From positions 62,001 through 126,000 of IMG/VR virus record IMGVR_UViG_3300008259_005066: a DNA stretch of 64,000 bases; one strand, written 5' to 3'. Both the position numbers and the translations under genes were made by a program. This document shows positions 5,466 to 28,757 of this stretch, one piece after another. The notes beneath the pieces are model-generated. The model was not told the DNA's origin, made no database searches, and saw nothing but the letters and a program-made list of their open reading frames with translations. Position 1 is the stretch's first letter. Every line of letters begins with the position of its first letter.

Positions 5466-6145
5466 TATCGCATCATTTCATTGAGTATGATCCGGCGCTG
5501 GCTGTTGTCTTTCCTATCCCAACGCACTGTTACCTGCACGTTGCGACCATCATTGATGATGCGGCCTTCTTTGAATACCACACCGCCCAAGATACCTGAA
5601 CGCTGGATAGATACTGTTTTGCGTAGATTGCTCTGGATGTTCACAGCATCGTTGCGCACGGCTGTGTTCTCTTCGCGATTGATCTCGCCAGATCGAGCGG
5701 CTTCTTCATCAGATGTTTCAAAAGCGAAATCCTGATTCTTGTTTGTGGCGAACTTGTTGGTCTTGTTGTCGCGAGCCTTTTCTAAATTCTTGGTCACTGT
5801 GTCCAGGAACCTTTTGGAATTGATGGTCTCAGGATGCAAGAACGAACTCATGCGATCTTTGGCCAGCACATAGGCCGCTTCGGTGGCCGATTGCACTGCA
5901 CGTTCCGAGTTGCCTTGAACTGGAGCATAGCCAGTGGCTTCTACAGCATCCAGGTCACCCAACAGTGAATAGATGACTTTGACACCTTCACGTTTGAAGT
6001 CCGATGCGGCACGTTGCTCAGAGATAGCCTGTTGTGGGCCTGGGTTCACTGTGCGATTGGGACCTACGTCTGTGGTCTTGGTAGAACTACAGGCCGAAAG
6101 ACCCAGGGCGGCGATCAAGGCCATGGCTAGGATTGACTTGTTCAT
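5465..6145 (-). CDS. Lipoprotein (LPP20-like)
   Basis: Start MNKSILAMALIAALGLSAC with lipobox LSAC. Confidence 0.75.
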   Translation of the reverse strand: MNKSILAMALIAALGLSACSSTKTTDVGPNRTVNPGPQQAISEQRAASDFKREGVKVIYSLLGDLDAVEATGYAPVQGNSERAVQSATEAAYVLAKDRMSSFLHPETINSKRFLDTVTKNLEKARDNKTNKFATNKNQDFAFETSDEEAARSGEINREENTAVRNDAVNIQSNLRKTVSIQRSGILGGVVFKEGRIINDGRNVQVTVRWDRKDNSQRRIILNEMMR

Positions 6146-6267
6146 TTGTTTTTGATCCATTCTCCGGCTTTGGAAAGATCTTGGCCGGCGCCGGAAACCG
6201 CGCCACCGATCGTGCCACAACCAACCAAAAGGCTGGCCACCAATACTGCAAAAACCAAGTGCTTCAT
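6142..6267 (-). CDS. 41-aa entericidin EcnA/B-like lipoprotein (not in ORF track)
   Basis: MKHLVFAVLVASLLVGCGTIGGAVSGAGQDLSKAGEWIKNK; SD AAGGAG; ATGA overlap with next gene. Confidence 0.75.
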   Translation of the reverse strand: MKHLVFAVLVASLLVGCGTIGGAVSGAGQDLSKAGEWIKNK

Positions 6268-6291
6268 GCGAACTCCTTAAAGATTGGTCAT

Positions 6292-6341
6292 AAAAAATCC
6301 TACTATGTGTGTATTATTACACAAGTAGGATTTTTGGTCTA
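6292..6341 (-). terminator. Long hairpin with U-tract after phasin, overlapping a sigma70-like promoter
   Basis: AAAAATCCTACT...AGTAGGATTTTTT inverted repeat plus inner TGTGTA/TACACA; TAGACC...TAATAAT. Confidence 0.6.
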
Positions 6342-6369
6342 GTGACCGGTTAACCGTTTTTTTACCAAA

Positions 6370-6645
6370 TTACTTGGTTTTGGTCTGGGATGTGTAGGCT
6401 TTCATGATACCCTCACCGAATTTGACATAGTCAAATTTAGCGGCTTCCTGGGCATGCTTGATGGTTTCTTGCACAACCGTGGTGCCAGCATCCAAAGTGG
6501 CCTTGGCGGCTTTTTTGGTATATTCGGATTGGTTGTCAATGAACTCATTCAATGCTGTGGCAATCTTTTCGTCAGTTACGAAAGTCTTGACAAATTGCTT
6601 CTTGCCGGTCTGGACTGCATCGATGGTCGCGTCTAATGTAAACAT
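6370..6645 (-). CDS. Phasin-like PHA granule-associated protein
   Basis: 91-aa amphipathic helical protein (IDAVQTGKKQFVKTFV...FIDNQSEYTKKAAK); SD AAGGAG; PhaR-like box upstream. Confidence 0.65.
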   Translation of the reverse strand: MFTLDATIDAVQTGKKQFVKTFVTDEKIATALNEFIDNQSEYTKKAAKATLDAGTTVVQETIKHAQEAAKFDYVKFGEGIMKAYTSQTKTK

Positions 6646-6704
6646 AGTGTTTCTCCTTGAGTTAAGCGAGTTTACTGCTAGAGACCCGCCCCATGCGGCA
6701 TCTC
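6646..6704 (-). promoter_or_regulatory. ROSE-like RNA thermometer in the phasin 5' UTR
   Basis: CUC(G)CUU pairs with AAGGAG with a bulged G; upstream hairpin GAGAU(G)CCG...CGGGUCUC. Confidence 0.65.
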
Positions 6705-6724
6705 CTTTGAACTATTATATATGA

Positions 6725-6749
6725 TAATTATTGCACTGCACAATAATTA
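6725..6749. promoter_or_regulatory. Palindromic operator, PhaR-box-like
   Basis: TAATTATTG-cactgca-CAATAATTA, containing TGCACTGCACAA. Confidence 0.65.
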
Positions 6750-6804
6750 ATCTACCCAGATAATAGTGTTTTGGCTAAGTAATTTTATCAAAATGGAGGA
6801 CTGC

Positions 6805-7185
6805 ATGGCTTGGACTGCTACACTCAACATCGTCAACAACACCCAATATAACCTAACCGTTAACCACAACACAGTGGGTGATTTAACTACTATCGCACCT
6901 GGTCAGTCATGGTCCTGGACCACATCTGATCCAAACAATACCAACGCCTTGCGTTTTTGGACAGTTCCGGAACAGTGGTATATGCAAGGTTCAGTGGCCT
7001 ATGGTCCCATGGCCGGAGTATACATGGACCGTGGCTGGATGGCACCCACGGATCAGACCATCCGCTTGGATGCCGATGTCAATGGCACAGGATTCTCACA
7101 GACCCAAAACGGTGGAGCCACTGTGGTGCCTTGGAACGGATTTGAATCCGGTGGCACGATCAATATGAAGTTTTCTAAGACTTGA
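6805..7185 (+). CDS. Hypothetical beta-rich protein
   Basis: SD GGAGG before ATG 6805; 126 aa, Thr/Asn/Trp-rich. Confidence 0.7.
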   Translation: MAWTATLNIVNNTQYNLTVNHNTVGDLTTIAPGQSWSWTTSDPNNTNALRFWTVPEQWYMQGSVAYGPMAGVYMDRGWMAPTDQTIRLDADVNGTGFSQTQNGGATVVPWNGFESGGTINMKFSKT

Positions 7186-7885
7186 TGTTGTAGGCCAAAC
7201 CAAATCGTTCTAGCCCTTTGATATAAGTCCATCCTAGATCCCATTCCCAGGGTTTTTGGCTGAGTTTAGGCGAAGCTGGATCAGCATGATGATTGTTGTG
7301 TAGTTCTTCACCACCGATGAAGAATGCCCAGGGCACAATATTAGTGGAATAGTCTTTGGTTTGAGTGTTCCTATAACCCCACCAGTGTCCCAGGCCGTTT
7401 ATGACGCCGGCTGCCCACAGTGGGATCCAAATCATCTGCCATAGCCAAGGCAACCAACCCCAGTCCCAGCCCCAAATCATGCAGTTGATAAAGAACATCA
7501 AGGTCACCCCCAACCAGTTGAATGGTGCATAGATGTGACGCTCTACCCAGTCATCGGGCGTGCCCACACCATACTGGTTGACCATGGCTTTGTCTTTTGC
7601 GGCCCAGGCATAGTAAAAAGCACCGCCTAATAAAATCTGCCAAATTCCTTCATTTTGCGGACTGTGCGGATCACCTTCCGCGTCAGTGAATCTGTGATGT
7701 TTTCTGTGTGTGGCCACCCACTGTTTGGTGACCATGCCTGTGGTGAGCCACAGCCAAAATCTCATGAAATGTGCCACACGTGGATCAAATGTCACACCTC
7801 TATGTGCCTGGCTACGATGCAAGTAAAGTGTGACACAAGCTATGGTGATGTGTGTCATCACCAGGATGTATATGAATAGGAGCAT
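7175..7885 (-). CDS. Delta-9-type fatty acid desaturase
   Basis: His boxes HRSQAH, HRKHH, HNNHH; TM segments; start taken at MLLFIY. Confidence 0.93.
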   Translation of the reverse strand: MLLFIYILVMTHITIACVTLYLHRSQAHRGVTFDPRVAHFMRFWLWLTTGMVTKQWVATHRKHHRFTDAEGDPHSPQNEGIWQILLGGAFYYAWAAKDKAMVNQYGVGTPDDWVERHIYAPFNWLGVTLMFFINCMIWGWDWGWLPWLWQMIWIPLWAAGVINGLGHWWGYRNTQTKDYSTNIVPWAFFIGGEELHNNHHADPASPKLSQKPWEWDLGWTYIKGLERFGLAYNIKS

Positions 7886-7889
7886 CAAA

Positions 7890-8504
7890 TTACTTATCCT
7901 TGATCCAGAAGCCCAATCTACTACCAGCAGGGCTGTGATACCACTGTGTACCGGGAGGCTGTTGTTGGCTGGATTCGGGCCATACAGGCCAGATCTCATC
8001 ACTATCATGATTGGCGAAATCATCATTGTATCGTAGATGCACTTCGATCACTGTATCGCCGATGTATTCTACGTTGATCCATTCCTGATAATACTTGAGA
8101 TCGTGCAACATCCCAGGAAAAGGCCGATCTAAATCCGTTCGACACCACCGTGAAAAACGATCCAATCTCCGAGGATCATCTCTGAAACCTTGCACCGTGA
8201 GATGCTGTTGGCCCCAATGGTAGTCCACTGACACATGCGGACCTTCGAGCACCTGGGTCCAGAAAAATCCATCGGGCACTGTGTCACTGTCACCTTTTTC
8301 CATCCACACGATCTGCGCACCTCGACTCATCATGCGGATGTTGGTGATAGGTCTTATCACATATTCTCCGGACCATGGTACGGGAATACCAGCCGGTCCA
8401 GCGGCGATGCCCTGTCTTCGTGCCACTATGAGTTTGTCATAGACCCACAACCACTGTGGTGGGCATGAGTCATACACGTCGCGATCGCTGACGAACTGCA
8501 TCAC
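7890..8504 (-). CDS. Hypothetical protein, ATP-grasp-like
   Basis: YDKL, VIRPITN, INVEY..VIEVHLR pattern. Confidence 0.55.
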   Translation of the reverse strand: MMQFVSDRDVYDSCPPQWLWVYDKLIVARRQGIAAGPAGIPVPWSGEYVIRPITNIRMMSRGAQIVWMEKGDSDTVPDGFFWTQVLEGPHVSVDYHWGQQHLTVQGFRDDPRRLDRFSRWCRTDLDRPFPGMLHDLKYYQEWINVEYIGDTVIEVHLRYNDDFANHDSDEIWPVWPESSQQQPPGTQWYHSPAGSRLGFWIKDK

Positions 8505-25559: not shown

Positions 25560-26351
25560 ATGCCAATAGCATTTGATTTAATTTCAGACCTCCATGTGGA
25601 AACTTGGGATCAACCATTTGATTGGGAAGGACAGGCCACTGCTACTCTTTGTGTGGTGGCCGGAGATGTGTCTCGAGACCGTGCCTTGGTCAAAGATGCT
25701 TTGGAAAAACTCAGCCAACGATATCGTGCAGTGATGTTCATAGATGGCAACGACGAGCATCGATGGACCTTGAACGATCTTGGGGACAGTTATCGCAGTC
25801 TAGTGGAAGAAATAAGCGACATACCCAATGTTACCTATCTCCAAGACAATGTAGTCATCGTTGATGGTGTAGCATTCCTGGGTACCAATGGTTGGTGGAG
25901 TTTCGATTTTGAACCTGGAGTGGACTATGATCAGACGCGGTTGTGGTTCCAAGACAGATACCAAGTTGATAGGACAGTTTCGGATGCCATAGAATCCATG
26001 AGCATGCAGGATTTCGCTTATCTGGCCAGATCAGTGCGTAGATTGCAGACGCATCAAGACGTGAAAAAAATAGTGTTGATCACCCATACTCCACCGCGTT
26101 TGGATCTCATACATCATGACATCGAGATAGCCGACAGCTATAGGATCAACTGTTCAGGCAACAGTTATATGACGCAGGTATTGGGCGAGGACACCGAGAG
26201 CAAGATCTCTACTTGGTGTTTTGGACACTACCACGGCGATGTTGATACCACCATACAAGGCATCAGATATGTCAACAACTGTAGAGGAAGAGGCAACACA
26301 CCTTGGTGCAAGCCTGTGTATTACCCTCGTAGGATTGAAATAAGTCTCTAG
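25560..26351 (+). CDS. Calcineurin-like metallophosphoesterase
   Basis: SDLH, AGD, GNDE, THTPP, FGHYH. Confidence 0.9.
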   Translation: MPIAFDLISDLHVETWDQPFDWEGQATATLCVVAGDVSRDRALVKDALEKLSQRYRAVMFIDGNDEHRWTLNDLGDSYRSLVEEISDIPNVTYLQDNVVIVDGVAFLGTNGWWSFDFEPGVDYDQTRLWFQDRYQVDRTVSDAIESMSMQDFAYLARSVRRLQTHQDVKKIVLITHTPPRLDLIHHDIEIADSYRINCSGNSYMTQVLGEDTESKISTWCFGHYHGDVDTTIQGIRYVNNCRGRGNTPWCKPVYYPRRIEISL

Positions 26352-26668
26352 GCCGAATCTGGCTCTAGTTTGACCTGTAAAGGATACCCGGCACCACGTG
26401 CCATCACAGTGACTTCGATGCCTTTTTGTTCGGCTATCTCATAGGGCAACACGGCCACCACTGCAGATCCTGCTTCATGGATGTCGAAAGTGATTTTTTC
26501 TGCTGTTGAGGGGCTGTAATCAAAATGTTCTACCAGGCTTTCAATCACGAATTCCATGGCAGTTTTATTGTCATTGATGTAGATAACTTTGAACATGGGA
26601 GGTTCTTTGAGCACCTCTCTGGGCCTGACGGTTGTTTTAGTTTTGGGTTGTGTAGCAGTTTCTGACAT
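26348..26668 (-). CDS. clpS: Clp protease adaptor
   Basis: PPMFKVIYINDNKTAMEFVIESL, IHEAGSAVV, EIAEQK, YPL. Confidence 0.93.
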   Translation of the reverse strand: MSETATQPKTKTTVRPREVLKEPPMFKVIYINDNKTAMEFVIESLVEHFDYSPSTAEKITFDIHEAGSAVVAVLPYEIAEQKGIEVTVMARGAGYPLQVKLEPDSA

Positions 26669-26727: not shown

Positions 26728-27165
26728 TTATTTTGCGTATGAGATTGCAATACGCTTTGGCTTCATTTCTTCGGGCACGATGCGCTGTAGATGCACGTTC
26801 AAGATGCCGTCTTTCATCACAGCATCGCGAACCTCTACATAATCAGCCAGTTGGAATGTGCGCAGGAACTTGCGAGCCGAGATACCGCGATGTAGATAGT
26901 TCAATTCTGAGTCATCGGTGTTCTTTTCACCGGTGATCACCAACTGTCCTTCATGGAAATCTACATTCACTTCACCTTCGGCAAACCCAGCCACTGCCAC
27001 CTGGATTTCATAGGTGTCTTCTCCTGTTTTCAGGATGTTGTAAGGCGGGTAGTTCTGGCTTTGCGCGGCATGGTCAAACTGATCCATGATACGGTCGAAC
27101 AAGCGGTCGACGCCAATGGTATTACGATAGAAGGGGGTGAGATCAAAAGATGTGATTTTAGTCAT
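26728..27165 (-). CDS. Small heat-shock protein (Hsp20/IbpA family)
   Basis: NYPPYNI, AVAGF, YLHRGIS.R.F, DGIL, IAI C-terminal motif. Confidence 0.96.
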   Translation of the reverse strand: MTKITSFDLTPFYRNTIGVDRLFDRIMDQFDHAAQSQNYPPYNILKTGEDTYEIQVAVAGFAEGEVNVDFHEGQLVITGEKNTDDSELNYLHRGISARKFLRTFQLADYVEVRDAVMKDGILNVHLQRIVPEEMKPKRIAISYAK

Positions 27166-27221
27166 AACATTCTCCTTTTTTAAGCAAGTTGACTATGTAG
27201 GCCCGACCATCGGCACCTACA
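27166..27221 (-). promoter_or_regulatory. ROSE-like RNA thermometer in the hsp20 5' UTR
   Basis: CUU(G)CUU-AAAA-AAGGAG hairpin; upstream UGUAGGU(G)CCGA...UCGGGCCUACA hairpin. Confidence 0.75.
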
Positions 27222-27225
27222 AATA

Positions 27226-27256
27226 TATTTATACAGGATTTTTTGAGAGTTGTCAA
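27226..27256 (-). promoter_or_regulatory. Superimposed sigma70 and T4-type late promoter for hsp20
   Basis: TTGACA-N17-TATAAA, where the -10 is part of TATAAATA. Confidence 0.75.
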
Positions 27257-27504
27257 TATCGCTCGCCGGCCACATTAACCAATTCATATTCCAACCAGCG
27301 CCGGAACTGTTCTGGTGGGTTCCATGTCATGGCCCACATGGTATAGGTTTCGTCGTGATCAAAAGCCACACGATGTTCGTATTTTATGGTTTTTTGCGTG
27401 TATCTCACACCATATTGTTCAGCCCAACTTTGCACCTGCTGTTTGATGAATTCCAGGGTGCGGTGATAGTCGCCGTGTTGTGGCAACCGGAACCGGATAT
27501 ACAT
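27253..27504 (-). CDS. Hypothetical protein
   Basis: 83-aa ORF. Confidence 0.65.
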   Translation of the reverse strand: MYIRFRLPQHGDYHRTLEFIKQQVQSWAEQYGVRYTQKTIKYEHRVAFDHDETYTMWAMTWNPPEQFRRWLEYELVNVAGERY

Positions 27505-27556
27505 TAGAACTGGCCTTTTCTACATTGCCATCCGGAACGATCACTGTTTTACCCAA
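27504..27556 (-). pseudogene. rpsU: Internally deleted ribosomal protein bS21 remnant
   Basis: SD AAGGAGG, TTG-GKTVIVPDGNVEKA joined directly to CAG TTC TAA in another frame. Confidence 0.55.
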
Positions 27557-27557
27557 A

Positions 27558-28757
27558 CTATTCCTCCTTGTAAACGGGTTGTGGGTTATTTATTTGCTCT
27601 CGGTTAATAACTACGCGGTTTATCCCCCGATCACGATAGCGTTTGATAGCGAACATGTGTGGCATCAACACACGCTCAAGTTCGCTGTGCAAGGCGCGGG
27701 CACCAGTACCGAAATCTGCAGAACGCTGTGCTATGGTGGTCAAGGCCTCGTTCTCGAAATCAAGATCTATGCTGTCTGAAGCAAACAGGTGTTGATATTG
27801 ACGTATCAATGAATTCTTGGTATCTGTGAGCACATGCACCAGATCATCCGTGGTCAGTTCATCTAGGCTGACCCAACTAGGGAAACGGCCGACGAATTCA
27901 GGTATCAGACCAAATTTTACCAGATCATCGGGCATGGTCTTTTGTAGATCCACGTCACCTGATACTTTGACTTCAGCATTGAATCCCATGGAGGACCCGA
28001 ACAGTCGTTTCTTCACTATCTGGTCTAGGCCCACGAATGCGCCGCCGGCAATGAACAGTATATTGGCAGTGTCTATTTCGATCATTTCGCCACCAGGGTG
28101 TTTGCGGCCGCCACCAGCCGGAACTCGGCATACTGTGCCTTCTACCAGCTTCAACAGGGCCTGTTGCACACCTTCACCACTCACATCTCTGGTGATAGAT
28201 GTTGATTCGCTTTTTCGAGCGATCTTGTCAATTTCATCAACAAATATTATACCACGACGACATTTTTCCACATCGCCACCAGCGGCAGTGAGCAATCGCT
28301 GTATGAGACTTTCTACATCATCGCCCACATATCCGTCTTCGGTTATGCTAGTGGCATCTGCGATGGCAAAAGGCACGTCGAGATAACGTGCCACGGTGCG
28401 AGCCAGCAGGGTCTTGCCCGATCCTGTGGGGCCCAGCATCAGGATATTGGCCTTGTCTAGTTCTATTTCAGGATCGCGATTCTGTATGCGTTTGTAATGA
28501 TTGGCGATGGCCACTGCCAAGACAACCTTGGCACGGTCCTGCCCTATCACATACTGATCTAGATAACGTTTGAGTTCTTGAGGATCAATGTCTGTGTGAT
28601 TGTGTTCTCTCGTTACCGGATCCTCTTGCAAGAGTTTTTGGCAAAGATCCACGCAATCGTTGCAGATGGCCACATCATTGGCCACTATGAGTTTTTTAAC
28701 ATCGTCTTTGTGTTTGTTGCAGAAACTGCAAAGTTCGTATGAAGTATCTTCTTTCAT
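27558..28757 (-). CDS. clpX: Clp ATPase
   Basis: C4 zinc finger, GPTGSGKT, GYVG, DEIDK, RDVSGEGVQQALL, RKH, MGF loop, GARAL. Confidence 0.97.
   Translation of the reverse strand: MKEDTSYELCSFCNKHKDDVKKLIVANDVAICNDCVDLCQKLLQEDPVTREHNHTDIDPQELKRYLDQYVIGQDRAKVVLAVAIANHYKRIQNRDPEIELDKANILMLGPTGSGKTLLARTVARYLDVPFAIADATSITEDGYVGDDVESLIQRLLTAAGGDVEKCRRGIIFVDEIDKIARKSESTSITRDVSGEGVQQALLKLVEGTVCRVPAGGGRKHPGGEMIEIDTANILFIAGGAFVGLDQIVKKRLFGSSMGFNAEVKVSGDVDLQKTMPDDLVKFGLIPEFVGRFPSWVSLDELTTDDLVHVLTDTKNSLIRQYQHLFASDSIDLDFENEALTTIAQRSADFGTGARALHSELERVLMPHMFAIKRYRDRGINRVVINREQINNPQPVYKEE

What the first reader, a model, noticed from the sequence alone, without database searches (positions are those of the whole stretch)
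6646..6704. Phasin and hsp20 share a two-hairpin ROSE-like RNA thermometer
Seen: both leaders (6646-6704 and 27166-27221, minus strand) have a 5' hairpin with core U(G)CCG...CGGG (bulged G) and a 3' hairpin in which CUY(G)CUU pairs with the SD AAGGAG around a bulged G. The flanking stem sequences differ but keep pairing. Known: U(U/C)GCU opposite the SD defines ROSE elements of small heat-shock genes, and some phasins have chaperone-like activity. Inference: heat or sHSP-mediated translational co-regulation of a phage phasin, which I do not know to be described.
Basis: partly seen in the sequence, partly recalled or inferred. Interest (0 to 1): 0.72.

Follow-up and report, generated by a model that had tools for sequence, protein, structure and literature searches.

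The report
Phage ROSE-like RNA thermometers on two genes
An uncultured freshwater jumbo phage puts the same short two-hairpin, ribosome-site-masking leader (the kind bacteria use as a heat sensor for small heat-shock genes) on its own hsp20 gene and on a small, highly transcribed helical protein of unknown function. Hundreds of related phages keep this leader through compensating mutations.

Summary
Both minus-strand leaders (about 6643-6707 and 27160-27221) fold into a stable 5' hairpin with a bulged G, followed by a weak hairpin. In the weak hairpin CUYGCU pairs with AGGAG around a second bulged G.

- **Specificity.** A covariance model built from related leaders finds exactly these two sites in the 64-kb window (50.8 and 48.2 bits; next best 12.9). 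It finds only these two in the 209-kb phage record.
- **Conservation.** The leader is kept upstream of 61/80 related hsp20 loci and 77/80 loci of the 91-aa gene, with 99-100% pairing and many compensatory changes.
- **Family.** Rfam ROSE_3 matches both leaders full-length but below its threshold. The phage model in turn finds the experimentally studied ibpA thermometers of Pseudomonas and Stutzerimonas.
- **Other genes.** In related phages the same leader precedes groES and an AhpC peroxiredoxin.
- **Transcript.** Metatranscriptome contigs delimit a monocistronic mRNA of about 415 nt that starts at the base of hairpin I.

The 'phasin' label is only weakly supported (recurrent sub-threshold Phasin_2 hits; hhalign probability 46%). 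Temperature response is inferred, not shown.

Verdict: a real, divergent, phage-borne branch of the short ROSE-like thermometers that serves a small viral stress regulon. Moderately interesting.

The parts
6731..6743 (-). Imperfect palindrome (TTGTGCA-G-TGCAA) over the -35 region of the promoter of the 91-aa gene. It is a candidate operator or gene-specific promoter element.
   Evidence: It occurs once in the 209-kb record. Relatives carry TGTTGCA-N-TGCAACA at the same place. TTGC-N3-7-GCAR is found in 37/66 unique upstream regions of this gene and in 0/43 hsp20 upstream regions.
6714..6719 (-). -10 hexamer TATAAT of the 91-aa gene. The predicted transcription start is A6707/A6706.
   Evidence: Sequence. 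TATAAT or TACAAT is conserved at this distance in relatives. The longest metatranscriptome contig ends at 6706.
6680..6705 (-). Leader 1, hairpin I: 6-bp outer stem, bulged G6699, 4-bp G+C inner stem, 5-nt loop. It sits at the very 5' end of the mRNA.
   Evidence: RNAfold; R1 alignment; covariation in 7 of 9 pairs across relatives; RNA contig ends at 6698, 6699 and 6706.
6638..6675 (-). Leader 1, hairpin II. Upper stem: anti-SD CUC[G]CUU (6664-6670) pairs with SD AAGGAG (6653-6658), with G6667 bulged. Lower stem: GUAAA (6671-6675) pairs with UUUAC (6638-6642), just after the AUG at 6643-6645.
   Evidence: The SD/anti-SD pair changes CG to UA in 6 relatives that have AGGAA. Lower stem: own versus swapped-class duplex energy; it appears in the predicted MFE from 20 C upward.
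6370..6645 (-). ORF of 91 aa ('p91'): three predicted helices. Function unknown; weakly phasin-like.
   Evidence: ORF list. 892 homologues, all unnamed. AlphaFold2 pLDDT 83.6, helices 2-22, 26-70 and 73-88. Phasin_2 leads.
6292..6335 (-). Intrinsic terminator of the 91-aa gene: a long hairpin followed by six U.
   Evidence: Sequence. The metatranscriptome contig of run X2 ends at 6291.
27228..27256 (-). hsp20 promoter: TTGACA (27251-27256), 17-nt spacer, TATAAA (27228-27233).
   Evidence: Sequence. TTGACW-N16-18-TAWAA is found in 23/43 unique hsp20 upstream regions and 2/66 of the other gene. The consensus scan did not flag it because position 6 of the -10 hexamer is A.
27196..27221 (-). Leader 2, hairpin I: 7-bp outer stem, bulged G27214, inner stem CCGA/UCGG, 3-nt loop.
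   Evidence: RNAfold z = -2.3; R1; 7 of 9 pairs covary in 43 distinct hsp20 leaders.
27160..27194 (-). Leader 2, hairpin II. Upper stem: CUU[G]CUU (27182-27188) pairs with AAGGAG (27172-27177), with G27185 bulged. Lower stem: AGUCA (27190-27194) pairs with UGACU (27160-27164), which covers the UG of the AUG (27163-27165) and codon 2.
   Evidence: Lower stem: own duplex -4.78 versus -0.60 kcal/mol for swapped-class, better in 39/45. One relative has a compensatory GGUCA/UGACC.
26728..27165 (-). hsp20: an IbpA-like small heat-shock protein of 145 aa.
   Evidence: Pfam HSP20 65.5 bits. NCBIfam IbpA 132.6 bits, below the equivalog cut-off of 212. It keeps the equivalents of IbpA Y34, R93 and R97.
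26348..26668 (-). clpS homologue directly downstream of hsp20. Context: part of a proteostasis gene cluster.
   Evidence: Pfam ClpS 82 bits.
27558..28757 (-). clpX-like AAA+ unfoldase upstream of hsp20. Context: same proteostasis cluster.
   Evidence: Pfam AAA_2, zf-C4_ClpX and ClpB_D2-small.

Best explanation
Both leaders are divergent, phage-borne members of the short two-hairpin ROSE-like RNA thermometers. The type example is the ibpA leader of Pseudomonas (Rfam ROSE_3).

Each mRNA starts at or next to a stable G+C hairpin I with a conserved bulged G. Hairpin I probably nucleates folding and protects the 5' end. It is followed by a weak hairpin II. In the upper stem of hairpin II, CUYGCU pairs with the Shine-Dalgarno AGGAG around a bulged G. 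In its lower stem, a gene-specific linker pairs with the start codon and the next codons.

At low temperature the ribosome site is occluded; warming melts hairpin II and allows initiation.

The phage puts this one leader behind two different promoters. The result is a small post-transcriptional stress regulon: hsp20 and a 91-aa helical protein here, plus groES and a peroxiredoxin in relatives.

Shown: the structures, their conservation and covariation, the family resemblance, the genes served, and the transcript boundaries of the 91-aa gene. Inferred: temperature-dependent melting and its effect on translation.
For: 1. **Specific and non-random.** R1 gives 50.8 and 48.2 bits; the next best hit in 64 kb is 12.9 bits. 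There are only two copies in each of G000, G001 and G002.

2. **Covariation.**
- Seed alignment made by MAFFT, not fitted to structure: 100% paired, 52 double-change cells, 0/500 shuffles reach this, slid controls 35-59% paired.
- hsp20 leaders, found by a model built almost entirely from the other gene's leaders: 99.8% paired, 105 double-change cells, 7 of 9 hairpin I pairs covary.
- Leaders of the 91-aa gene: 99% paired. The outermost SD/anti-SD pair switches CG to UA in 6 sequences whose SD is AGGAA.

3. **Family resemblance.**
- ROSE_3 aligns end to end with both leaders.
- One related phage hsp20 leader reaches the gathering score, 43.4 versus 43.
- R1 finds the ibpA leaders of Stutzerimonas and Pseudomonas at up to 39.7 bits, 39 loci at E<0.01. 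The same loci score 57-64 bits with ROSE_3.
- That bacterial class was shown by reporter assays, toeprinting and structure probing to be a thermometer. Hairpin II is the sensor; hairpin I is stable and conserved (PMC3669281).

4. **Start-codon masking is class-specific.** The linker is AGUCA against AUGACU in hsp20 and GUAAA against UUUAC in the 91-aa gene.

5. **Genes served are stress genes.** In a random sample of viral contigs, 26 hits precede hsp20, 4 precede p91-like genes and 1 precedes AhpC. groES carries it in G003 and G004.

6. **Promoters differ while leaders agree**.

7. **Transcript.** Four freshwater metatranscriptomes hold 100%-identical contigs covering only 6291..6706, with no coverage of the flanks.
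Against: - No temperature data exist for these leaders.
- Nearest-neighbour folding gives only partial SD occlusion with little temperature dependence. Mean unpaired probability of AGGAG is 0.16 to 0.35 for leader 1 and about 0.40 for leader 2 between 5 and 42 C. The Stutzerimonas ibpA leader gives 0.02.
- For leader 2 the MFE structure does not contain the full ROSE-type upper stem.
- Hairpin II pairs are almost invariant in hsp20 leaders, so they give no covariation. Their conservation could reflect the SD itself.
- Both leaders score below Rfam's gathering threshold.
- The alignments from the covariance model lean towards the model's structure.
Confidence: 0.7

Rival explanations
1. The leader is mainly a binding site for a small heat-shock protein (the phage Hsp20 or host IbpA). 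The protein represses translation until it is titrated away by aggregated proteins. On this reading the regulon senses protein damage rather than temperature. It could also work together with thermosensing.
For: - E. coli, Cedecea and Vibrio IbpA repress their own translation by binding the structured ibpA 5' UTR. This needs R93 and positive charge at 97/98 (PMC10474464).
- The phage Hsp20 keeps R98 (=R93, at least 90% conserved among phage homologues), Y39 (=Y34) and R102 (=R97).
- Hairpin I keeps specific bases, not only pairing: the bulged G, the C-G pair after it and the Y-G pair before it. These bases are kept across all four gene classes and in bacterial ibpA leaders. A plain stabilising stem would not need that.
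Against: - The K98 equivalent is T103 in the phage protein, and K98A abolished repression in E. coli.
- The arginine is a general sHSP feature.
- No binding was tested.
- In Pseudomonas, hairpin II alone still gave thermoregulation.
Confidence: 0.15
2. The leader is a constitutive expression module, not a sensor. Hairpin I protects the 5' end from RNase E, and the weak SD pairing only sets a fixed translation rate.
For: - The transcript starts at the base of hairpin I.
- The transcript is seen in at least 20 metatranscriptome runs, which fits an abundant, stable mRNA.
- Predicted SD occlusion is partial and nearly temperature-independent in the nearest-neighbour model.
- A stabilising role for hairpin I was proposed for Pseudomonas ibpA.
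Against: - The exact ROSE signature is kept over hundreds of diverged phages: the U(U/C)GCU anti-SD, the bulged G and the start-codon masking. When the SD changes, the anti-SD changes with it.
- The leader is restricted to stress genes: hsp20, groES, ahpC.
- Bacterial relatives of the element are proven thermometers.
Confidence: 0.12
3. The two leaders look alike by chance, or only because both carry a strong SD and a G+C hairpin.
For: Rfam E-values are modest and would not be significant for a 64-kb search.
Against: - R1 E-values are about 1e-11 to 1e-10, and there is no other hit in 209 kb.
- The leader is conserved at the same position in 138 of 160 related loci, with compensatory changes.
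Confidence: 0.01

Closest known systems
Short ROSE-like RNA thermometer of Pseudomonas ibpA (Rfam ROSE_3, RF02523; Krajewski et al. 2013, PMC3669281)
   Same: - Leader of about 60 nt with two hairpins.
- Hairpin I is G+C-rich, with the same GAUG-CCG...CGG-GUC core and a 5' bulged G.
- Hairpin II pairs U(U/C)GCU with AGGAG around a bulged G.
- It lies upstream of an IbpA-type sHSP gene.
- Detection is reciprocal.
   Different: - It scores below the family's gathering threshold (26.9 and 24.7 versus 43).
- The upper stem of hairpin II is shorter and A+U-richer, lacks the flanking G-C clamps, and is predicted to be much weaker.
- A lower stem is predicted to mask the start codon. In Pseudomonas the start-codon G was accessible at all temperatures.
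- It is carried by a virus.
- It also serves non-sHSP genes.
Classical ROSE elements of rhizobia and enterobacteria (Rfam ROSE RF00435, ROSE_2)
   Same: - U(U/C)GCU anti-SD with a bulged G.
- Both the SD and the start codon are masked in the last hairpin.
- They control heat-shock genes.
   Different: - Classical ROSE has three or four hairpins and about 70-120 nt.
- RF00435 scores only 13.1 bits on leader 2 and gives nothing on leader 1.
ROSE-like elements upstream of ABC transporter genes (PMC11342760, PMC12857270)
   Same: They set a precedent for ROSE-like thermometers on genes other than sHSP genes.
   Different: - They are bacterial, not viral, and serve different target genes.
- The first paper does not mention phage, virus or chaperone.
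Known phage RNA thermometers: lambda cIII (from my own knowledge) and the SPbeta blyA fourU element (PMC10586365, listed)
   Same: They are temperature-responsive leaders in phage or prophage genes.
   Different: They belong to different structural classes (alternative structures in cIII; fourU in blyA), are single genes, and do not control chaperones.
IbpA self-repression through its own 5' UTR (PMC10474464)
   Same: A structured ROSE-type leader upstream of an IbpA-like gene. The phage Hsp20 keeps the critical arginine.
   Different: It is not tested here. The K98 equivalent is not basic. Here the leader also sits on other genes.

Membership tests
ROSE_3 / short ROSE-like RNA thermometer | Reaches the Rfam RF02523 gathering score (43 bits) | tested here: not met
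   26.9 bits (leader 1) and 24.7 bits (leader 2), both full-length 1-69; nothing at gathering level. Related phage leaders score 25.7-43.4; bacterial controls score 57-64.
ROSE_3 / short ROSE-like RNA thermometer | Two hairpins only, in a 5' UTR of about 60 nt | tested here: met
   The 5' end of the RNA contigs lies at the base of hairpin I.
ROSE_3 / short ROSE-like RNA thermometer | U(U/C)GCU motif paired with the SD, with a bulged G opposite the SD | tested here: met
   CUC[G]CUU/AAGGAG and CUU[G]CUU/AAGGAG. 98-100% paired in 102 distinct related leaders.
ROSE_3 / short ROSE-like RNA thermometer | Stable, conserved G+C hairpin I upstream of the sensor hairpin | tested here: met
   Predicted in all folds from 5 to 42 C. 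7 of 9 pairs covary. It has the same core as the ROSE_3 consensus.
ROSE_3 / short ROSE-like RNA thermometer | Located upstream of a small heat-shock gene | tested here: met
   Met for leader 2 (Pfam HSP20). Leader 1 precedes a 91-aa protein that is not an sHSP, so it does not meet this feature.
ROSE_3 / short ROSE-like RNA thermometer | [quoted passage not shown] | not testable with these tools
   Only nearest-neighbour predictions are possible. They show weak, partial occlusion.
Classical ROSE (RF00435) | Three to four hairpins; matches the covariance model | tested here: not met
   13.1 bits, E 8.9 on leader 2; no match on leader 1. Only two hairpins are present.
FourU thermometer | Four consecutive U paired with the SD | tested here: not met
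   The anti-SD is CUYGCUU with a bulged G, not UUUU.
Phasin_2 (PF09361), for the 91-aa protein | Reaches the Pfam gathering score | tested here: not met
   No Phasin_2 hit for the protein even at E<=10. 11/44 relatives hit at E<=0.1 (best 8e-4) and 4/55 at E<=0.01 (best 1.6e-4).
Phasin_2 (PF09361), for the 91-aa protein | Profile-profile homology to bona fide phasin domains | tested here: inconclusive
   hhalign against 8 Phasin_2 domains (63-100 bits each): probability 46%, pairwise E 2e-4, 41 columns. In the Atlas a phasin cluster appears only at rank 95, score 0.88.
Phasin_2 (PF09361), for the 91-aa protein | Binds polyhydroxyalkanoate granules | not testable with these tools
   This needs biochemistry. 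The host is unknown.
IbpA-type small heat-shock protein, for the hsp20 gene | Alpha-crystallin domain (PF00011) above threshold | tested here: met
   65.5 bits against a cut-off of 20.8.
IbpA-type small heat-shock protein, for the hsp20 gene | NCBIfam IbpA equivalog cut-off (212 bits) | tested here: not met
   132.6 bits. IbpA is the best family, ahead of IbpB at 110.4. Identity to bacterial IbpA is 42-48%.
IbpA-type small heat-shock protein, for the hsp20 gene | Arg93 (E. coli numbering), needed for binding its own mRNA | tested here: met
   R98 aligns with R93 of Salmonella IbpA, Y39 with Y34, R102 with R97. K98 is replaced by T103.

The most novel reading that the evidence does not exclude
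A large clade of uncultured jumbo phages runs its own post-transcriptional proteostasis regulon. One ROSE-type leader, copied onto hsp20, a new small helical (possibly phasin-like, holdase-type) protein, groES and a peroxiredoxin, is read out by temperature and also by the phage's own Hsp20. On this reading Hsp20 binds the sequence-conserved bulged-G hairpin I and is titrated away by misfolded proteins. The virus would then sense the folding load of the infected cell and adjust chaperone supply independently of the host's sigma-32 response.
Probability: 0.15. Interest if true: 0.8.

Novelty: new member of a known kind. Interest (0 to 1): 0.5.

Why it matters
**What is new.**
- RNA thermometers of the ROSE type have been treated as bacterial devices for sHSP genes, and lately for ABC transporter genes.
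- Here the same device is carried by viruses, is widespread in phage hsp20 genes, and within one phage lineage has been placed on several unrelated stress genes behind different promoters.
- I found no paper in the held library that describes ROSE-like elements in phages.

**What it gives.**
- A compact, naturally diversified set of more than 100 sequence variants of a minimal thermometer. Hairpin II is much weaker than in Pseudomonas, which would fit cold freshwater hosts.
- A functional lead for an abundant, highly transcribed orphan phage protein family: it is co-regulated with chaperones.
- A concrete test of whether sHSP-mediated translational feedback extends to viruses.

**Practical point.** Rfam's ROSE_3 threshold misses almost all of these elements.

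Tried and rejected
- **Rfam at gathering thresholds on the whole window:** no hit.
- **The genome search with RF02523 on the phage record:** its first-look filter missed both real leaders. It listed a 17.8-bit site at G000:144663-144719 that has no SD or gene start and looks spurious.
- **MAFFT alignment of all 102 leaders:** too misregistered for RNAalifold, which found only 5 pairs. I replaced it with a trimmed, homogeneous 38-sequence seed.
- **megablast of 12 kb and tblastn of the 91-aa protein against GenBank phages:** no match. The lineage has no cultured representative in that collection.
- **Fold search of the 91-aa model against PDB and AlphaFold clusters:** only non-specific helical matches, E >= 0.15. 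A PDB profile search hit only designed helical bundles.
- **P0149 (760 aa, '6 stretches'):** it looked like a repeat protein of this domain, but it is a PPC-domain protein and a false lead.
- **Relatives-based genome search:** not available for virus records.
- **uORF in leader 1:** the AAGGAG-AUG at the 5' end of leader 1 opens a 7-codon frame. There is no SD-AUG spacing, and the AUG is absent in relatives that have C instead of U, so I rejected it.
- **Hairpin I as a terminator or attenuator:** rejected, because no U-run follows it.
- **Complex prediction of Hsp20 with the 91-aa protein:** not run, because I do not claim that they bind.

Full report
**What is in the sequence.**
- Both features lie on the minus strand, immediately upstream of start codons.
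- Leader 1 precedes a 91-aa ORF (6370-6645). Leader 2 precedes a 145-aa Hsp20/alpha-crystallin protein (26728-27165; Pfam HSP20 65.5 bits, best NCBIfam family IbpA).
- In each leader a G+C-rich hairpin I (6680-6705; 27196-27221) has an outer stem, a bulged G on the 5' side (G6699; G27214) and an inner stem CCG(N)/(N)CGG.
- A short linker follows, and then hairpin II.
- In hairpin II, CUC[G]CUU or CUU[G]CUU pairs with AAGGAG around a second bulged G (G6667; G27185).
- RNAfold recovers hairpin I in both leaders and the SD hairpin in leader 1.

**Context.**
- The window is bases 62001-126000 of a 209,518-bp IMG/VR virus record, estimated about 60% complete.
- Near-identical and related records are 315-352 kb, so this is an uncultured jumbo phage.
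- Phage-type genes are present: ribonucleotide reductase, DNA ligase, tail-spike-like and tape-measure-like proteins.
- There is no match to GenBank phages at the DNA level, and none for the 91-aa protein.
- hsp20 sits in a proteostasis cluster: clpX-like (27558-28757), an 83-aa ORF, hsp20, clpS (26348-26668).

**Is it more than chance?**
- Only these two places in the 209-kb record combine both hairpin motifs.
- I built covariance model R1 from 38 homologous leaders: 36 from the 91-aa gene of other phages and 2 from distant hsp20 genes. Neither window sequence was included.
- With filters off, R1 scores 50.8 bits (E 2e-11) at 6643-6704 and 48.2 bits (E 9e-11) at 27163-27219. The next best site in the window scores 12.9 bits.
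- Whole-record searches give two copies in this phage and in two relatives, and three copies in two more distant relatives.

**Comparative evidence.**
- Searches of viral contigs returned 80 loci for each protein.
- Reading the 100 nt upstream of each gene shows the same design nearly everywhere, down to about 44% protein identity for Hsp20.
- A simple parser found a bulged-G hairpin I in 94 of 105 distinct leaders.
- R1 detects the leader in 61/80 hsp20 loci and 77/80 loci of the 91-aa gene. In every case it lies directly before the start codon on the coding strand, and nowhere else in about 510 kb.
- Seed alignment, made by MAFFT and not fitted to structure: my structure is 100% paired with 52 double-change cells. 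No shuffle of 500 reaches this, and slid controls are 35-59% paired.
- hsp20 set, essentially independent of the model's seed: 99.8% of cells pair, 105 cells have changes on both sides, and 7 of 9 hairpin I pairs covary.
- Set of the 91-aa gene: 99% paired.
- In that set the outermost SD/anti-SD pair changes from C-G to U-A in six leaders whose SD is AGGAA. This is the one place where hairpin II can covary.
- Otherwise hairpin II is nearly invariant. That says nothing either way about pairing.

- The linker just 5' of the anti-SD is complementary to each gene's own start region. In hsp20, AGUCA faces (A)UGACU. In the 91-aa gene, GUAAA faces UUUAC after the AUG.
- hsp20 leaders: duplex energies of each linker with its own start region average -4.78 kcal/mol. 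With the other class's start they average -0.60, and with shuffled linkers -0.78. The own pairing is better in 39/45.
- Leaders of the 91-aa gene: the effect is weaker, at -1.93 versus -1.41 kcal/mol, better in 47/60.
- One hsp20 relative has the compensatory pair GGUCA/UGACC.
- Hairpin II is therefore a composite stem. It masks both the SD and the start codon, as in classical ROSE elements.

**Family assignment.**
- Rfam ROSE_3 (RF02523) aligns over its whole length to both leaders, including the GAUGCCG...CGGGUC core of hairpin I. The scores are 26.9 and 24.7 bits against a gathering score of 43.
- In a panel, bacterial ibpA leaders score 57-64 bits, one phage hsp20 leader reaches 43.4, and other phage leaders score 25.7-37.5.
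- Conversely, the phage-derived R1 finds the ibpA leaders of Stutzerimonas and Pseudomonas at up to 39.7 bits (E 3e-8), 39 loci at E<0.01. These loci were fetched as the nearest bacterial Hsp20 homologues, at 42-48% identity.
- The classical ROSE model gives 13.1 bits on leader 2 only.
- The Pseudomonas elements are experimentally established thermometers.
  - Hairpin II melts between 25 and 42 C and suffices for regulation.
  - Hairpin I is stable, conserved, and proposed to aid folding or mRNA stability (PMC3669281).
- The phage leaders are thus a divergent branch of that class: they work like it and resemble it reciprocally, but fail the curated score threshold.

**Transcript evidence.**
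- The stretch holding the 91-aa gene is held by at least 20 mostly freshwater metatranscriptome runs. The hsp20 stretch is held by five.
- Contigs from four runs in four studies are 100% identical to the window. They cover only 6291/6339/6355 to 6698/6699/6706, with zero coverage elsewhere in 6100-7000.
- The upstream end lies 7-8 nt after the TATAAT at 6714-6719, at the base of hairpin I.
- The downstream end coincides with an intrinsic terminator at 6292-6335.
- The gene is therefore an autonomous monocistronic unit of about 415 nt whose mRNA begins with hairpin I.
- Caveat: contigs carry no strand, and their ends are approximate.

**Promoters differ.**
- The 91-aa gene has a palindrome over its -35 region. 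It is TGTTGCA-N-TGCAACA in relatives and imperfect here at 6731-6743, and it is unique in the record.
- hsp20 has TTGACA-N17-TATAAA (27228-27256).
- The palindrome type occurs in 37/66 upstream regions of the 91-aa gene and 0/43 hsp20 upstream regions. The TTGACW type occurs in 2/66 and 23/43.
- Neither resembles a sigma-32 promoter (my own knowledge of that consensus). Any heat control would therefore be post-transcriptional.

**Which genes carry the leader.**
- The third copy in two relatives precedes a GroES homologue (Cpn10, 1.9e-32).
- I took a random sample of viral contigs selected only for GCTTAA..AGGAGAA..ATG. R1 hits at E<0.01 numbered 32.
- Of these, 26 precede diverse hsp20 genes, 4 precede relatives of the 91-aa protein, 1 precedes an AhpC/TSA peroxiredoxin (4e-30), and 1 has no readable downstream ORF (a stop directly follows the start codon).
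- The leader is thus common on phage hsp20 genes and has spread to a few other stress genes.

**The 91-aa protein.**
- It has 892 homologues at E<=1e-3, all unnamed and without Pfam domains. An exhaustive search finds 188 representative clusters.
- It has no hit of its own in Pfam, NCBIfam or PHROGs.
- AlphaFold2 with 44 sequences gives three helices, pLDDT 83.6. Fold and PDB searches are uninformative.
- Phasin_2 is the only Pfam family that recurs among relatives, always weakly. It appears at rank 95 in the Atlas.
- hhalign against eight bona fide Phasin_2 domains, taken from five alpha- and gammaproteobacterial genomes, gives 46% probability over 41 columns.
- I therefore treat 'phasin-like' as a lead, not a finding.
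- What can be said is limited to four points.
  - It is a small, all-helical protein.
  - It is widespread in this phage group.
  - It is among the phage transcripts most often seen in lake metatranscriptomes.
  - It shares its translational control element with chaperone genes.

**Mechanism and rivals.**
- The best explanation is SD and start-codon masking that is relieved by warming (confidence 0.7). Structure, family and context are shown; the temperature response is inferred.
- Against it, nearest-neighbour folding predicts only partial, weakly temperature-dependent occlusion, and a much weaker hairpin II than in Stutzerimonas.
- Two points soften that objection.
  - ROSE sensors rely on non-canonical pairs that such models ignore (my own knowledge).
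  - A weaker stem would suit cold freshwater hosts.
- Rival 1 (0.15), which may co-exist with thermosensing: sHSP-mediated feedback as in E. coli IbpA.
  - The phage Hsp20 keeps the R93, Y34 and R97 equivalents but not K98.
  - Hairpin I conserves specific bases beyond its pairing.
- Rival 2 (0.12): a constitutive stability and tuning module.
- Rival 3: chance, which is excluded.

**Novelty and score.**
- I found no paper on ROSE-like thermometers in phages.
- Known phage thermometers are of other classes.
- The architecture and presumed mechanism are those of a known family, so I file this as a new member of a known kind. It has three unusual aspects: a viral carrier, a multi-gene regulon, and an orphan-protein target.
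- Interest 0.5.

Noticed in passing
window 27419-27556 (junction 27511/27512); L006 995-1154: A ribosomal protein bS21 gene (70 aa, Pfam Ribosomal_S21 63 bits) lies between clpX and hsp20 in the otherwise 99.9-100% identical 315-kb record G001. In this window a clean 160-bp deletion removes most of it, leaving a 45-aa fusion ORF. This may be a strain variant or an assembly artefact. bS21-hsp20-Clp adjacency in phages is mentioned in PMC9723584.
   Followed up: yes
window 6731-6743 (-) and the same position in L088-L165: A 15-bp palindrome (TGTTGCA-N-TGCAACA in relatives, imperfect here) overlaps the -35 region of the promoter of the 91-aa gene. It is unique in the 209-kb record, conserved across relatives and absent from hsp20 promoters. 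It looks like an operator for a dimeric regulator; the regulator is unknown.
   Followed up: partly
L177 1490-1843 (G004:120780-...), L176 (G003): In two more distant jumbo phages a third copy of the leader precedes a GroES homologue (Cpn10, E 1.9e-32).
   Followed up: yes
L266 1910-2523 (-): In another viral contig a weaker copy of the leader (22.5 bits) precedes an AhpC/TSA peroxiredoxin (Pfam 4e-30).
   Followed up: partly
window 6142-6267 (-): A 41-aa lipoprotein-like ORF just downstream of the terminator of the 91-aa gene resembles entericidin EcnA/B (22.4 bits against a gathering score of 23.3). It has its own SD (AAGGAG).
   Followed up: partly
window 7175-8026 (-): A fatty-acid desaturase homologue (PF00487, 53.6 bits) lies about 0.5 kb from the leader-controlled gene. 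It is another gene with a possible link to temperature adaptation through membrane fluidity.
   Followed up: no
window 6292-6335 (-): A long hairpin followed by six U acts as the intrinsic terminator of the 91-aa gene. The tool's terminator scan missed it because the stem is A+U-rich. A metatranscriptome contig ends at 6291.
   Followed up: yes
window 6680-6708 (-): In this phage the 5' arm of hairpin I reads AAGGAG-AUG and opens a 7-codon frame ending in UAG. There is no SD-AUG spacing and the AUG is not conserved in relatives, so it is probably meaningless.
   Followed up: partly
L121, L131, L162: Three relatives of the 91-aa gene lack the thermometer. They have a short leader, or a different hairpin without an anti-SD, while keeping the palindromic promoter. 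They are natural 'leader-less' controls.
   Followed up: no
L069-L085: A more distant group of phage hsp20 genes (about 43% identity) has a different leader: a hairpin AGGUCGCUUUAGGAGGGCCU, then CUGUCU...AGGAGG. R1 did not detect it at E<=0.01. It may be another thermometer variant.
   Followed up: no
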